From Octopus sinensis (lineage: Eukaryota), in the NCBI RefSeq assembly GCF_006345805.1, contig NW_021830071.1, positions 1 to 5,395 of the forward strand: a stretch of DNA of 5,395 nt. The letters run 5' to 3'. The notes under the pieces were generated by a model, which was not told where the DNA came from, made no database searches, and saw only the letters and a program-made list of their open reading frames with translations. Made by a program: the position numbers and the translations under genes. Shown here piece after piece: positions 1-5,395 of this stretch; position 1 is the first letter of the stretch, and each line of letters begins with the position of its first letter.

Positions 1-438
1 GTGTGTGTCACTGTGTCTATATATTTGTGTTGTGCGTGTGTGCCTCTGTGTGTGTGAAGATATATATATATCAATATATAATATATATATATATATATAT
101 AATATATATTAGTATGCCTGTAGATATATAAATATGGATACATGTAATGTGTGTTTTATATACATATATTCTATTCTATATATATATATAAATACATATA
201 ACATATATTTATGTATGTATGCATATATTTATATATATAATATGTATATATATATCTATTTAGTCATTTTCTGTATATGTATATATATGTGTGTGGGTGT
301 GTATGTTTGAGTGTATGTGTGTGTATGTGTGTGTGTTATATATAAACATCAGTACAAAAATATGTTTCGTCAAGATATATATGTGTGAGTATGTATGTGT
401 GACATATGTATTTTTATGTGTGTATATATGCATACATA
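1..438. repeat. Low-complexity (TG)n/(TA)n microsatellite mosaic
   Basis: Interrupted runs of gtgtgt, atatat and gtatgt throughout the segment. Confidence 0.9.
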
Positions 439-1045: not shown

Positions 1046-1579
1046 ATTTTGTGCTAAAATGTAATCCAAATACTTTTTGAAATATGATCGAGTTGATCAT
1101 GACTGCGGTTGCGCGTGAATGTGTATGAGGTTGCAGTTTTAGGGAATACGTAGATACAAACACACACGCACACGCATAAGGAAGAGTTACTTTGGTAGAT
1201 GTGTAGATGAAATTTCTAAGTGATATGGCATCCATTATTGTTTCAAATTTGCCAGTGCGTTCGCCATTGCATAACCCCCACTCAAGAATCAGGATAGCGT
1301 TATACGACCAAATTATACGACCAAATTAAGGCAGGATGGGTCGAAACGACTATTGAGCAAAGACAACGATTAATTGCAAATTCATATTCTGCTTACGTAA
1401 GAAATTATTATTATTTTTATCTCAACCAAAAGTGCAGATCTCCTAACAGAGATCCTTCTGTAATATACGCCGACTGCAGCTGATATCAGACAGCCCAAAC
1501 TGTGCCACTGCACTACTCAACACTTGAACACAATAATTGACATATAACCATTCGTCCCCAAAATTAAATATATCTGTAA

Positions 1580-1790
1580 ATATATATAACGTTAATTCAG
1601 GGTAGAAATTGATATTCATCAATTAGAACCAGTGGTCTAGCATATTAAAAAAATCCGAAGATTAAAATATTTATATATACCAATTAAGGACTGAACACGA
1701 AAAGTGGACAGTCAAATGCTAGATATAGATGTCAAATCGCCATCTCCACAAAAGGATTATGTCTCAGATCAACTCAGCAAAAAAACCAAA
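1580..1790. repeat. Direct repeat copy 1 (~210 nt)
   Basis: ...ttaattcagggtagaaattgatattcatcaattagaaccagtggtctagcatattaaaaaaatcc...accaaa, near-identical to 2082-2296. Confidence 0.95.
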
Positions 1791-1828
1791 GCAATAAAAA
1801 AGTGAAAATATACGAAATAAATATTTAC

Positions 1829-1892
1829 CCATGTACTAATTAGTTTCGACTGTTATTTTCCGCAAGGAAAAGTGCAGCCATCATCAGCATGG
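1829..1892 (-). ncRNA. Type I hammerhead ribozyme (minimal form, palindromic stem III)
   Basis: Minus strand reads CCAUG-CUGAUGA-U-GGCUG-CAC-UUUUCC-UUGC-GGAAAA-UAA-CAGUC-GAAA-CUAAUUAG-UA-CAUGG. Stem I is CCAUG/CAUGG. Both conserved core boxes (CUGAUGA, GAAA) are present. Stem II is GGCUG/CAGUC plus UUUUCC/GGAAAA. Stem III is the perfect palindrome ACUAAUUAGU. The cleavage triplet is GUA, with predicted cleavage between window positions 1834 and 1833. Confidence 0.88.
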
Positions 1893-2081
1893 TCCCATAT
1901 AAAATGCAATTTGCTGGACTAGCCGCAAACACGATACCGAAATATCGCGTGCGTGGAGTACAGCCTATTACATTTGAATATATATTTCAAATGCCTTTAC
2001 TTTTGGCGCGTTGAGACCCGAGAAAAACTAGCCTGCAGCTAATAATTAGCAGCAGTTAATTTATCGGTTAGAGAACATACA

Positions 2082-2296
2082 TATTTATATAACATTAATT
2101 TAGGGTAGAAATTGATATTCATCAATTAGAACCAGTGGTCTAGCATATTAAAAAAATCCCAAGATTAAAATATTTATATATACCAATTAACGACTGAACA
2201 CGAAGAGTGGACAGTCAACATGCTAGATATAGACGTCAAATCGCCATTTTCCACAAAAAGATTATGTTCTCAGATCAAACTCAGCACAAAACCAAA
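2082..2296. repeat. Direct repeat copy 2 (~215 nt)
   Basis: ...ttaatttagggtagaaattgatattcatcaattagaaccagtggtctagcatattaaaaaaatcc...accaaa. Homology to copy 1 stops at 2296, where a pyrimidine tract begins. Confidence 0.95.
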
Positions 2297-2297
2297 T

Positions 2298-2353
2298 GTT
2301 CCTTTTTCTCTCTCTTCCTTTCTCTCTCTCTGCCTTTCTTTCGTTTTTTTCTC
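2298..2353. repeat. CT-rich polypyrimidine low-complexity tract
   Basis: ttcctttttctctctcttcctttctctctctctgcctttctttcgttttttctc. Confidence 0.8.
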
Positions 2354-2913: not shown

Positions 2914-2982
2914 GTAATAATATATATAATATATATATATATATACATAGATATATATACATATGTATATATATATATATTC

Positions 2983-3055
<73 letters not shown>

Positions 3056-3100
3056 ATGCATGTTCATATCTATTCAATATTATATATAATATATATATAA
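2914..3100. repeat. (TA)n microsatellite
   Basis: Long, nearly pure TA run (pure over about 2995-3043). Confidence 0.95.
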
Positions 3101-3104
3101 TCAT

Positions 3105-3307
3105 TGGACGCACGCAGTTGTCGAGTGGTACCCGCGTGAGCGAAAAAGACCACCGGAAGACCTCCACGACGGTAGTGACGATTTCAAGAGGACGATTGGG
3201 ATCACGTGGATGAGAAAGACGCGATCCAGAGTGGAGTGAACAGCGTGCTGTGAACAGCGGTGTCAAATGGAAGCCTGACAGACTGGTCGGTCAAATTGAT
3301 CAAGTGA
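3105..3307 (+). mobile_element. RTE-clade LINE 3' fragment (ORF C-terminus pseudogene plus short 3' UTR)
   Basis: From 3105: WTHAVVEWYPRERKRP(P), then in a shifted frame GRPPRR (3155-3172), then back in frame SDDFKRTIGITWMRKTRSRVE*TACCEQRCQMEA* (stops 3237-3239, 3276-3278). This matches the RTE C-terminal motif W(T)xxxxEWxPxxxKRxxGRPxxRWxDD. Confidence 0.8.
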
Positions 3308-3646
3308 ATATAGATATATATATATATATCTATATATACATACATTAGAAAGTTGGAGAGTTGGAGATGATGTACAGGTATTTTATATTAGAAGAATGAG
3401 GTATCAGAAATTCGGATGGTTTATATTTACCAGATATTTATTTGTATATTACCTGTTTTATACATCATATAACTTATATCATATATCATATATTAGCGCT
3501 TGCGTCCATTCTGTAGCGAGTTTTTTTATATCTTTTAGACATTTCACTACCAGTGGCCTAGCATATAATAAATAATATAATATAAAATAATAATAATAAT
3601 AATAAATAATAATAATAATACATAATAATAATAATGAATTAGTATA

Positions 3647-3755: not shown

Positions 3756-4064
3756 TCAAGTGTTGTGTTGGCGAATCTCAGGAAGCATGGAAGTCTTGAA
3801 GGATGCAGTGCTCCGACAACTAACAACCGATGCCGGCAGTTTGTTCCACGCTTCAGCAACTCTCAGCGTGAAAAAATGGTTCGTGAAGTCATGGGAGCTG
3901 TGCTGTTTTCTTACTTTGTAAATATGTCCACGGGTGTTAGATGGGTGGAGTTTGAAGAGGTGCTCAGTGTTATTGTTTGTGCGATGGTTGATAATTTTAT
4001 GGGTGCCTGCCAGGTCAGCTGCCAGACGTCGGAGTTTCAATGTGTCCATGCCCAGGGAAGTAAG
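3756..4064 (-). pseudogene. C-terminal ~100 codons of LINE ORF2 (downstream of the reverse transcriptase domain)
   Basis: Corresponds to ORF-track ORF 3756..4049, extended in frame to 4064. The ATG at 4049 is an internal Met, not a real start. Confidence 0.8.
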
Positions 4065-4559: not shown

Positions 4560-4666
4560 TATATATATATATATCTATATCTATATATATTTATATATTT
4601 ATATAATTAGTTATATATATATATATATAATATATATATATATATTATATTTAATATACATATATC

Positions 4667-4697
<31 letters not shown>

Positions 4698-4767
4698 TAT
4701 AAATTATTTATATATATATATAATATACATATATATATAATATACCTATATATATATATAACTTATT

Positions 4768-4800
<33 letters not shown>
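4560..4800. repeat. (TA)n microsatellite
   Basis: Degenerate TA run of ~240 nt; source of ORF 4525..4740. Confidence 0.95.
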
Positions 4801-4985: not shown

Positions 4986-5395
4986 ATTACAGATGTATCA
5001 AACTTTCAAAGATGTGAAATTGTCGGTGCTCGTATGGCAGGCGCTACAGTAACGAAAACAGCCAAAATGTTTGGTGTTTGAAGAAGTACTGTCTCGAAGG
5101 TAATGACAGCCTTTAAGAAAGAGGGAAAAACCTCCTCGTCGAAGCAAAACTCCGCAAGAAAACCAAACCTTTCAGCTCCCAAAATTACTGCATTCTTCAT
5201 GACCACCTTGAGAACCTAGTTTCCACAAAAGCTGTACGCTGGGATCTGCAGAAAGCCGGATTTCACGGGAGGGCTGCAATCAGGAAACCACTACTTTCAA
5301 AGCCAAAAGATACAAAGCATTTAGAGTGGAGTAAAAACCTACAAAATTGGTCCCTATAGCAGTAGATGAATGTTATTTTCTCGGGCGAGTCATCC
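4986..5395 (+). pseudogene. Tc1 transposase pseudogene (N-terminal HTH domains to first catalytic motif)
   Basis: (ATT)ITDVSNFQRCEIVGARMAGATVTKTAKMFGV*RSTVSKVMTAFKKEGKTSSSKQNSARKPNLS-APKITA, then a frameshift near 5193, then LHDHLENLVSTKAVRWDLQKAGFHGRAAIRKPLLSKPKDTKHLEWSKNLQNWSL*Q*MNVIFSGESS. Shows the paired-like HTH, GRKP-like linker, RKPLLS, W..W and VIFSDES motifs. Stops are at 5079, 5357 and 5363. Confidence 0.92.

What the first reader, a model, noticed from the sequence alone, without database searches (positions are those of the whole stretch)
1829..1892. Structurally intact type I hammerhead ribozyme on the minus strand
Seen: all catalytic core nucleotides (C3-A9 CUGAUGA, G12-A15.1 GAAA, U16.1, A17) are present. 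All three stems pair: stem I 5 bp, stem II 5+6 bp around a 3x3 internal loop, and stem III the perfect palindrome ACUAAUUAGU. One extra U lies between A9 and G10.1. Established: minimal type I hammerheads with short palindromic stem III are typical of Penelope-like retroelements and metazoan retrozymes and often cleave as dimers; single-nucleotide insertions after A9 are tolerated in some natural hammerheads. Inference: this copy may still self-cleave after GUA (1834/1833). It is the only feature here that looks undecayed and potentially catalytic among otherwise dead elements.
Basis: partly seen in the sequence, partly recalled or inferred. Interest (0 to 1): 0.85.

Follow-up and report, generated by a model that had tools for sequence, protein, structure and literature searches.

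The report
Penelope-type minimal hammerhead ribozyme relic
The window, probably octopus DNA, really does carry a complete small self-cutting RNA motif of the kind that Penelope-like jumping genes scatter by the thousand through animal genomes, so it is genuine but ordinary, and this lone copy is unlikely to cut by itself.

Summary
Window 1892-1829 (minus strand) holds a complete type I hammerhead: stem I of 5 bp, CUGAUGA, one extra U, a 5+6 bp helix II, GAAA, the 10-nt palindrome ACUAAUUAGU, and GUA before the cut at 1834/1833. It is the only such motif in the window. Chance would give about 4e-6 per window, and about 5e-4 per 2.7-Gb genome at this quality.

The extra U is not a defect. It is a published hallmark of the minimal hammerheads of Penelope-like elements (PLEs), along with a short helix I, a long helix II and a palindromic helix III. 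All 33 minimal hammerheads I recovered from unrelated metagenomic contigs carry it.

Rfam finds no hammerhead here, but it also misses those control motifs. A model built from the controls hits exactly 1829-1892(-) at 23 bits.

The motif sits in a non-coding ~503-nt unit present as 1.43 head-to-tail copies (2296-1580), with only one ribozyme. Folding favours an inactive monomer, while a two-molecule fold gives the double hammerhead. This is a new member of a known kind, probably an immobile relic. No sister copies could be fetched, so covariation and activity are untested.

The parts
1888..1892 (-). Helix I, 5' strand (CCAUG)
   Evidence: Pairs with CAUGG at 1833-1829. The covariance model R1 aligns it as helix I.
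1881..1887 (-). Catalytic box C3-A9 (CUGAUGA)
   Evidence: Direct reading. Matched exactly by R1.
1880..1880 (-). Unpaired U between A9 and G10.1, a hallmark of PLE minimal hammerheads
   Evidence: Direct reading. [quoted passage not shown] All 33 min-HHRs found in metagenomic contigs have a T here, although the descriptor allowed none.
1848..1879 (-). Helix II: GGCUG/CAGUC (G10.1-C11.1 at its base), 3x3 internal loop CAC/UAA, UUUUCC/GGAAAA, loop UUGC
   Evidence: Predicted in every fold, whether monomer, dimer or 503-nt circle.
1844..1847 (-). Catalytic box G12-A15.1 (GAAA)
   Evidence: Direct reading. R1 alignment.
1835..1844 (-). Helix III palindrome ACUAAUUAGU (A15.1 to U16.1). It forms 3 bp plus an AAUU loop in a monomer, or a 10-bp helix between two copies.
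   Evidence: It is a perfect reverse-complement palindrome. The MFE of two molecules is the double hammerhead with this 10-bp helix.
1833..1834 (-). Predicted cleavage site: after A17 (1834) of GUA and before C1.1 (1833)
   Evidence: Follows from hammerhead numbering applied to the sequence. Not tested experimentally.
1829..1833 (-). Helix I, 3' strand (CAUGG)
1580..2082 (-). One full ~503-nt non-coding unit that contains the hammerhead (35% G+C)
   Evidence: The period is 503-504 nt from the direct repeat. There are no Pfam matches in any frame. The circular fold is -119.2 kcal/mol, z = -3.1.
2083..2296 (-). Upstream partial copy, holding only the 3' 214 nt of the unit and no hammerhead. It makes a pseudo-LTR-like direct repeat with 1580-1793.
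   Evidence: 93% identity over 215 columns to 1580-1790. Boundaries come from the alignment with flanks.
2299..2339 (.). AG-rich microsatellite abutting the element's upstream end, a possible insertion target
   Evidence: Tandem Repeats Finder row 2299-2339. PLEs show an insertion bias for microsatellites (PMC8557442). That this was the target is inference only.

Best explanation
The motif is a genuine minimal type I hammerhead ribozyme of the class carried by Penelope-like retroelements (PLEs) and their non-autonomous derivatives, the animal non-LTR retrozymes. It lies in a non-coding ~503-nt unit inserted as 1.43 head-to-tail copies (2296 down to 1580 on the minus strand) in what is probably an octopus genome.

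The likely mechanism in the parent family is inferred from the anatomy and the literature. Longer-than-unit or tandem transcripts bring two ribozyme copies together. Their 10-nt palindromes pair to build a stable shared helix III, and the helix I strands pair crosswise. Each core then cuts after GUA, leaving a 5'-OH and a 2',3'-cyclic phosphate. Unit-length RNA can be circularised by a host ligase and copied by a PLE reverse transcriptase into longer-than-unit cDNA. That would explain the partial-tandem insertion seen here.

This particular locus has only one ribozyme and no partner in cis, and its monomer prefers an inactive fold. It is therefore most likely an immobile, neutrally drifting relic whose core happens to be intact.

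What is shown: the motif, its non-random nature, its match to the min-HHR hallmarks, the partial tandem, the lack of coding capacity, and the dimer fold. What is inferred: self-cleavage, circular RNA, mobilisation by a PLE, and neutrality.
For: The complete core and three helices are the only hit in the window. The chance expectation is 4e-6 per window, and about 5e-4 per 2.7-Gb genome at the observed quality. All four non-descriptor hallmarks of PLE min-HHRs listed in PMC4209133 are present: a nucleotide between 9 and 10.1, G10.1-C11.1, palindromic 15.2-16.2 and loop 3, and a short helix I with a long helix II. In 26 AT-rich, eukaryote-like metagenomic contigs I found 33 min-HHRs. All have the extra T, including eight motifs not selected by my search pattern, and they show compensatory changes in helices I and II. 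The covariance model R1, built from 16 of them without the window sequence, hits 1829-1892(-) full length at 23 bits, E about 6e-5, with the next best hit at 9 bits. The two-molecule MFE of -39.6 kcal/mol is exactly the double hammerhead, with a 10-bp intermolecular helix III, crosswise helix I and an unpaired core. The unit is arranged as a partial tandem, with 1580-1790 and 2083-2296 at 93% identity and a period of 503 nt. This is the more-than-unit head-to-tail layout described for PLEs. The unit length lies within the 51-972 bp reported for non-LTR retrozyme families, in which monomer derivatives are common. The unit is non-coding, has low G+C, and folds better than shuffles as a circle, z = -3.1. 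The host is inferred from a LINE-tail ORF that is 94% identical to an Octopus vulgaris protein and 91% identical in DNA to locus L001.
Against: No Rfam hammerhead family scores, even at E<=10, though the same holds for the control min-HHRs. No second copy of this hammerhead or of the 503-nt unit could be retrieved from any collection, so family membership, copy number and stem covariation are untested. No reverse transcriptase or GIY-YIG remnant lies in the window, and no target-site duplication of 6 nt or more was found. The seeds for R1 were partly gathered with a pattern taken from the window's own core and helix II base, so part of the 23 bits is circular. The monomer hammerhead fold is only about 0.14% of the ensemble. 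In a 126-nt native context the fold is unremarkable, z = -0.36. In a hypothetical tandem transcript the double hammerhead lies 4.2 kcal/mol above the MFE. The window's helix II (32 nt with an internal loop) and helix III palindrome (10 nt) are both larger than in the min-HHRs I could compare (15-26 nt and 6 nt).
Confidence: 0.72

Rival explanations
1. The motif is the hammerhead of the pseudo-LTR or 3' end of an autonomous PLE that was severely 5'-truncated on insertion, rather than part of a dedicated non-coding retrozyme-like family. The ribozyme class and mechanism are the same, but the parent element differs.
For: PMC4209133 reports that most genomic min-HHRs occur as single motifs 'probably related to truncated PLEs'. 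PLE hammerheads sit in pLTRs near the 3' end, and PLEs insert as partial tandems. The window shows such a partial tandem.
Against: The full repeat period is only 503 nt and has no RT or GIY-YIG similarity in any frame. A truncated autonomous copy in partial tandem would be expected to keep some coding sequence between the repeats. The hammerhead lies in the unique part, not in the repeated pLTR-like part. The two readings cannot be separated without an octopus PLE consensus.
Confidence: 0.2
2. The motif is a canonical, monomer-active type I hammerhead, stabilised by loop 1 to loop 2 tertiary contacts as in coral or schistosome repeats, and it cleaves efficiently on its own in this locus.
For: The catalytic core is complete and the triplet is GUA. 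Beyond the 5-bp helix I, AUAU/AUAU could pair across a 4x4 internal loop (GGGA/GUAA), which might serve as a loop 1 (direct reading).
Against: There is no hit to Rfam Hammerhead_1 or any other hammerhead model. Helix II is 11 bp with an internal loop, not the canonical 4 bp plus loop 2, and helix I is 5 bp rather than 6 (one search gives the canonical sizes). The monomer MFE pairs CUGAU of the core with AUUAG of helix III. The palindromic helix III and the extra U point to the dimeric minimal class.
Confidence: 0.05
3. The motif is a chance match to a degenerate descriptor in AT-rich repetitive DNA, and the adjacent direct repeat is an unrelated local duplication.
For: A loose min-HHR descriptor is expected to hit about twice by chance in a genome of octopus size. 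No sister copies and no Rfam support were found.
Against: At the observed quality (5-bp helix I, 5+6 bp helix II, 10-nt perfect palindrome) the expectation is about 5e-4 per genome and 1e-9 per window. The unrequested hallmark, the extra U, is present. A model built from other organisms' motifs hits exactly these 64 nt. The two-molecule MFE reproduces the double hammerhead.
Confidence: 0.03
4. The motif is a domesticated hammerhead that processes a host transcript, for example one in an intron or 3' UTR, and is kept by selection at this locus.
For: The motif is intact while its neighbours (LINE tail, Tc1/mariner fragment) are broken.
Against: No host gene is recognisable in the window. A repeat divergence of 7% predicts only about 2 hits in 64 nt, so intactness needs no selection (inference). 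The minimal dimeric architecture is poorly suited to a single-copy cis role.
Confidence: 0.02

Closest known systems
Minimal hammerheads (min-HHRs) of metazoan Penelope-like elements (Cervera & de la Pena 2014, PMC4209133; Lunse, Weinberg & Breaker 2017, cited in PMC6765202)
   Same: Both are type I in topology, with a helix I of 4-5 bp and a larger than usual helix II. Both have an unpaired nucleotide between A9 and G10.1, a G10.1-C11.1 pair and a palindromic helix III/loop 3 that implies action as a dimer. Both occur as a lone motif in a partial-tandem, low-G+C repeat.
   Different: No RT/GIY-YIG ORF or recognisable pLTR of an autonomous PLE lies nearby. The palindrome is 10 nt, against 6 nt in every comparison motif. 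Helix II is 32 nt long with a 3x3 internal loop. The host would be a cephalopod, and I found no report of hammerheads in cephalopods.
Animal non-LTR retrozymes (Cervera & de la Pena 2020, PMC7229834; Li, Clavereau & Pollet 2026 preprint, 10.64898/2026.07.22.740005)
   Same: Both are non-coding, low-G+C units a few hundred nt long, carrying one type I hammerhead per unit in head-to-tail arrangement. The 503-nt length lies within the 51-972 bp range. Monomer derivatives are common, and the family is thought to derive from PLE pLTRs. The unit folds better than shuffles as a circle.
   Different: Only 1.43 units and a single ribozyme are present, so no unit-length RNA can be released from this locus. 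Invertebrate retrozymes described so far mostly carry canonical, monomer-active hammerheads. This one resembles the dimer-dependent amphibian and PLE type. Circular RNA has not been shown.
Newt satellite 2 and axolotl retrozyme hammerheads, and the viroid ASBVd double hammerhead (Forster et al. 1988, cited)
   Same: A short helix III capped by a palindromic loop makes the monomer unstable. Two copies form a double hammerhead with an extended helix III.
   Different: Those have a canonical 4-bp helix II with loop-loop contacts, occur in long tandem arrays or replicating circles, and have no extra nucleotide after A9.
CChMVd (+) hammerhead with an extra A10 (De la Pena & Flores 2001, cited)
   Same: It has one extra nucleotide between A9 and G10.1 in a natural, active hammerhead.
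   Different: It is a type III plant viroid ribozyme, so the context and the helix that is open both differ.

Membership tests
Hammerhead ribozyme, type I | Conserved core C3 U4 G5 A6 N7 G8 A9 ... G12 A13 A14, with A15.1-U16.1 and a non-G at position 17 | tested here: met
   CUGAUGA at 1887-1881, GAAA at 1847-1844, U16.1 at 1835 and A17 at 1834.
Hammerhead ribozyme, type I | Three helices around the core, with helix I open (5' and 3' ends in helix I) and a G10.1-C11.1 pair at the base of helix II | tested here: met
   Descriptor hit, constrained fold at -13.8 kcal/mol and R1 alignment.
Hammerhead ribozyme, type I | Score at or above the gathering threshold of an Rfam hammerhead model (Hammerhead_1, _3, _II, HH9, HH10) | tested here: not met
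   No hammerhead family is listed even at E<=10. In the control, Rfam also lists none for eight loci carrying min-HHRs, so this test lacks power for the minimal class.
Hammerhead ribozyme, type I | Site-specific self-cleavage | not testable with these tools
   This needs in vitro transcription or mapping of RNA ends.
PLE minimal hammerhead (min-HHR) | [quoted passage not shown] | tested here: met
   U at 1880. The hallmark is stated in PMC4209133, and 33 of 33 comparison motifs carry it.
PLE minimal hammerhead (min-HHR) | Palindromic 15.2-16.2 and loop 3, giving an extended helix III in a dimer | tested here: met
   ACUAAUUAGU is a perfect palindrome, and the two-molecule MFE is the double hammerhead.
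PLE minimal hammerhead (min-HHR) | Short helix I (4-5 bp) and a larger than canonical helix II (6-8 bp) | tested here: met
   Helix I is 5 bp. Helix II is 5+6 bp around a 3x3 internal loop, which is longer than the published range.
PLE minimal hammerhead (min-HHR) | Location in the flanking repeats (pLTRs) of an RT plus GIY-YIG element | tested here: not met
   There is no RT or GIY-YIG similarity in the unit or elsewhere in the window. The motif lies between the direct repeats, not in them. The literature notes that most genomic copies are solo motifs, so this lowers the claim of being 'in a PLE', not the assignment to the ribozyme class.
PLE minimal hammerhead (min-HHR) | Membership of a multi-copy consensus family with covariation within the genome | not testable with these tools
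   No eukaryotic genome collection is on hand. The viral scan, the six-frame protein query and exact look-ups found no copies.
Animal non-LTR retrozyme | Non-coding, low-G+C unit of roughly 150-450 bp (up to 972 bp) with one type I hammerhead per unit | tested here: met
   The unit is 503 nt, 35% G+C, with no Pfam hits.
Animal non-LTR retrozyme | Tandem array with at least two hammerheads, so that a unit-length RNA is released | tested here: not met
   Only 1.43 units and one hammerhead are present. At best the locus is a 'monomer derivative' in the sense used.
Animal non-LTR retrozyme | Stable, highly self-paired circular RNA | tested here: inconclusive
   The circular MFE is -119.2 kcal/mol with z = -3.1, but the complementary strand gives z = -3.9. 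Expression as a circle is untestable here.
Canonical type I hammerhead with loop 1 to loop 2 contacts (schistosome, coral, human intronic) | Helix I of about 6 bp closed by loop 1, and helix II of about 4 bp closed by loop 2 with conserved interacting nucleotides | tested here: not met
   Helix II is 11 bp with an internal loop, and there is no Rfam Hammerhead_1 hit.
Schistosome Sm-alpha-like SINE with hammerhead | tRNA-derived pol III promoter upstream of the ribozyme | tested here: not met
   ARAGORN finds no tRNA-like gene in the window. This is a weak test for degenerate promoters.

The most novel reading that the evidence does not exclude
The 503-nt unit may represent a so far undescribed cephalopod family of retrozyme-like, PLE-dependent non-autonomous elements. 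Its hammerhead would have an unusually long helix II with an internal loop and a 10-nt palindromic helix III, giving a more stable double hammerhead than the usual 6-nt version. Its tandem copies elsewhere in the genome would still be transcribed and processed into small circular RNAs in octopus tissues.
Probability: 0.2. Interest if true: 0.45.

Novelty: new member of a known kind. Interest (0 to 1): 0.25.

Why it matters
The finding adds a probable cephalopod example to the very wide distribution of Penelope-type minimal hammerheads. It also shows a variant with a longer palindromic helix III and a bipartite helix II. If the family proves to be multi-copy and expressed, it would give a handle on ribozyme-derived circular RNAs and on PLE activity in octopus genomes, which are known for abundant transposons. 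There is a practical lesson too. Rfam's hammerhead models miss this whole class, so Rfam-only annotation pipelines will under-report such ribozymes. And the 'extra U' should be read as diagnostic rather than as damage. As a single locus it is an ordinary relic of a known kind of mobile element.

Tried and rejected
1. Rfam cmscan was run on the whole window and on 1780-1950 at E<=10 and gave no hammerhead family. I do not treat this as a refutation, because Rfam also misses the control min-HHRs.

2. The mir-297, mir-3149 and mir-1277 'hits' in the window are (TA)n/(TG)n low-complexity matches far below gathering scores, so I dismissed them.

3. The search for sister copies failed by every route:
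- The viral contigs pattern scan gave 0 matches.
- The single metagenome scan returned 120 loci, none related to the octopus unit. Most GC-rich hits are chance matches inside bacterial coding sequence.
- A chimeric six-frame protein query of 1560-2310 against 5.8 billion proteins gave no hit.
- Exact look-ups of two window ORFs found nothing on record.
- The 20-kb Octopus vulgaris locus L001 is only a paralogous LINE site, with no hammerhead.

4. I looked for RT/GIY-YIG ORFs next to the metagenomic min-HHRs, both to confirm PLE linkage and to seed an octopus PLE search. I found only short or unrelated ORFs (jockey-like RT and mariner-like fragments by eye), so I dropped this line.

5. No target-site duplication of 6 nt or more flanks 2296/1580.

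6. A tRNA-like SINE promoter was not found.

7. Supplementary alignments of PMC4209133 and the Lunse et al. paper are not held, so I could not build a fully independent reference alignment.

8. A stable monomer fold was rejected. The MFE of the 64-mer, of the 126-nt context and of the 503-nt circle all pair the core CUGAU with AUUAG.

Full report
**1. Observation**

The minus strand from 1892 to 1829 reads CCAUG-CUGAUGA-U-GGCUG-CAC-UUUUCC-UUGC-GGAAAA-UAA-CAGUC-GAAA-CUAAUUAG-U-A-CAUGG. This gives:
- a 5-bp helix I;
- the C3-A9 box;
- one extra U at 1880;
- a helix II of 5 bp (with G10.1-C11.1 at its base and one G.U), a 3x3 internal loop and 6 bp closed by UUGC;
- G12-A15.1 (GAAA);
- the 10-nt palindrome ACUAAUUAGU running from A15.1 to U16.1;
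- A17 at 1834, with the predicted scissile bond between 1834 and 1833.

Every item in the finding checks out at the stated coordinates.

A type I descriptor of my own finds this site and nothing else on either strand. It found nothing in 40 Mb of first-order Markov sequence with the window's composition. An analytic estimate, verified by conditional simulation (4.3e-10 against 4.1e-10 per position), gives 4.4e-6 expected hits per window and about 2 per 2.7-Gb genome for the loosest minimal-hammerhead descriptor. For a motif as good as this one it gives about 1e-9 per window and about 5e-4 per genome. The motif is not a chance match.

**2.

cmscan against all 4227 Rfam 15 families lists no hammerhead family at E<=10. 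This holds for the whole window and for 1780-1950 alone with laxer filters. As a control I scanned eight metagenomic loci that together carry about a dozen clear minimal hammerheads (see section 4). Rfam lists no hammerhead there either. The curated models therefore do not cover this class.

**3. What class it is**

Cervera and de la Pena (PMC4209133) defined the minimal hammerheads of Penelope-like elements (PLEs). [quoted passage not shown] The authors list four features that emerged without being in their descriptor:
- consensus families with covariation;
- the G10.1-C11.1 pair;

The window motif has the last three, and the first cannot be tested here.

The same paper reports three further points. 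Most genomic min-HHRs are solo motifs. Single motifs show no detectable cleavage in vitro. Dimers or helix-III-extended versions cleave only weakly. The review PMC6765202 says the same and cites Lunse et al. for cleavage as dimers.

**4. Independent comparison set**

My one metagenome scan used CTGATGATGGC-N15-35-GTCGAAAC and returned 120 loci. The GC-rich ones are chance matches in bacterial genes. About 26 AT-rich, eukaryote-like contigs carry 33 complete min-HHRs with a 6-nt palindrome, ACAUGU. All 33 have a T after A9, although the descriptor allowed none. Eight of them have helix II sequences such as GGGCG...CGCCC and GAGC...GCUC that my search pattern could not have selected.

Sixteen distinct sequences align with 92.7% of cells paired and 27 cells changed on both sides, against 9.9 +/- 2.2 in shuffles and 2-12 in slid registers. 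One caveat applies: the descriptor required pairing, so the percentage paired is partly by construction.

A covariance model built from these 16 sequences, without the window sequence (R1), was run with filters off over the window and over 20 kb of Octopus vulgaris DNA. It hits exactly 1829-1892(-), full length, at 23 bits with a rough E of 6e-5. The next best hit scores 9 bits. Part of that score is circular, because the seeds were found with the window's own core and helix II base. The helix I pairing, the helix III pairs and position 17 are independent of the pattern.

**5. Folding**

- As a 64-mer the hammerhead fold is -13.8 kcal/mol against an MFE of -17.3. In the MFE, CUGAU of the core pairs with AUUAG of helix III. 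The hammerhead fold makes up about 0.14% of the ensemble.
- In a 126-nt native context the fold is unremarkable, z = -0.36.
- Two molecules together have an MFE of -39.6 kcal/mol. That structure is exactly the double hammerhead: a 10-bp intermolecular helix III, helix I formed crosswise, and both cores unpaired.
- The ensemble dimerisation energy is only about -4.1 kcal/mol, so pairing in trans at cellular concentrations is negligible.
- In a hypothetical tandem transcript of two units, the double hammerhead lies 4.2 kcal/mol above the MFE.

This is the behaviour expected of a dimer-dependent, weakly active min-HHR. It argues against efficient cleavage by a lone copy.

**6. Context**

Windows 1580-1790 and 2083-2296 are direct repeats with 93% identity over 215 columns and a period of 503-504 nt. 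Alignment with flanks fixes the ends at about 2296 and about 1580. On the ribozyme strand the order is:
- a partial copy of 214 nt, which is the 3' part of the unit;
- a full 503-nt unit with the hammerhead at unit positions 191-254.

That makes 1.43 head-to-tail copies with one ribozyme. The insertion ends do not coincide with the cleavage site, so the template was longer than a unit. This more-than-unit, partial-tandem layout is the signature of PLE insertions. The 503-nt size is within the 51-972 bp of non-LTR retrozyme families, which are now argued to derive from PLE pLTRs and often occur as monomer derivatives.

Further properties of the unit:
- It has no coding similarity in any frame, and no relatives among 5.8 billion predicted proteins.
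- It is 35% G+C and as a circle folds to -119.2 kcal/mol, z = -3.1. The complementary strand gives z = -3.9, so this is weak evidence.
- No target-site duplication of 6 nt or more was found, and no tRNA-like promoter.
- The upstream end abuts an AG-rich microsatellite, which is compatible with the microsatellite bias of PLEs.

**7. Host and neighbours**

A 97-aa ORF at 3756-4049(-) is the C-terminal tail of a LINE-type element. It is 94% identical to an Octopus vulgaris predicted protein. The DNA is 91% identical to a paralogous site on O. vulgaris chromosome OX597841.1. The window is therefore most likely from an octopus. The 3' end of the window carries a frameshifted Tc1/mariner transposase N-terminus (HTH_23, HTH_SB, HTH_Tnp_Tc3_2). 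Long (TA)n and (TG)n tracts fill much of the rest. I found no paper reporting hammerheads in cephalopods. The only link is that octopus PLE remnants of the hammerhead-less Naiad clade are known.

**8. Is 'intact' meaningful?**

If the two repeat copies were identical at insertion, 7% divergence means about 3.5% per copy. That predicts about 2 changes in 64 nt and about 0.5 in the 15 invariant positions (inference). An intact core is then unsurprising under neutrality and is not evidence of present function.

**9. Verdict**

This is a genuine hammerhead of the PLE and non-LTR-retrozyme minimal class, sitting in a short non-coding partial-tandem element. I am confident in the motif and its class (about 0.85). 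I am less confident in the sub-classification between a non-autonomous retrozyme-like unit and a truncated PLE end. This copy is probably inactive on its own.

It is a new member of a known kind. The longer palindrome and the bipartite helix II are modest variations. The missing decisive evidence is sister copies, covariation, RNA ends and cleavage assays, and none of these could be obtained with the collections on hand.

Noticed in passing
window 3756-4049 (-), with the (ATA)n tract 3565-3635 just downstream: A 97-aa ORF forms the C-terminal tail of a LINE-type retrotransposon. It is 94% identical to an Octopus vulgaris 'hypothetical predicted protein / Tick transposon' entry, is 5'-truncated and is followed by a microsatellite tail. 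This is the basis for assigning the window to an octopus.
   Followed up: partly
window ~4990-5395 (+), frames +2 then +1: A frameshifted N-terminal fragment of a Tc1/mariner transposase (HTH_23 at 3.8e-6, HTH_SB, HTH_Tnp_Tc3_2 at 8e-6) runs off the end of the window.
   Followed up: partly
window ~3105-3300 (+): A G+C-rich island of about 200 nt (about 50% G+C against 32% for the window) lies between two (AT)n tracts. It has no Pfam hit and no tRNA. It may be a SINE or another repeat fragment inserted into a microsatellite.
   Followed up: no
window 1300-1328: A perfect 13-nt tandem duplication (TTATACGACCAAA x 2.2, 100% matches) lies in otherwise unique sequence downstream of the element.
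   Followed up: no
window 60-259, 288-336, 822-937, 2920-3099, 4560-4800: Long (TA)n and (TG)n microsatellites produce all the mir-297, mir-3149 and mir-1277 'matches' in the Rfam E-value scan. All of those are far below gathering scores and are not microRNA genes.
   Followed up: yes
L003, L009, L027, L029, L035, L037, L045, L050, L053, L057, L058, L068, L072, L074, L081, L087, L093, L095, L104, L105, L109, L112, L118, L119, L120 (coordinates): AT-rich, eukaryote-like contigs in public metagenomes carry several families of minimal hammerheads. The layout is helix I of 4-5 bp, CUGAUGA plus an extra U, then GAAA followed by CAUGU, so that A15.1 to U16.1 reads as the palindrome ACAUGU. Rfam 15 does not detect any of them. 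They are probably host (animal) DNA within the metagenome samples.
   Followed up: partly
L009 (943-985+, 2243-2289+, and two on the - strand) and L104 (1319-1365+, 401-447-): Minimal hammerheads occur in pairs on opposite strands within 1-2 kb. This echoes the 'dual min-HHRs in opposite strands' noted for Schistosoma in PMC4209133 and the inverted truncated copies typical of PLE insertions.
   Followed up: no
L050 2948-3064: A near-perfect 117-nt hairpin scores 47.7 bits (E 5e-7) against the plant MIR2600 model on both strands, below the gathering score. It is most likely an inverted-repeat transposon (MITE-like) rather than a microRNA.
   Followed up: no
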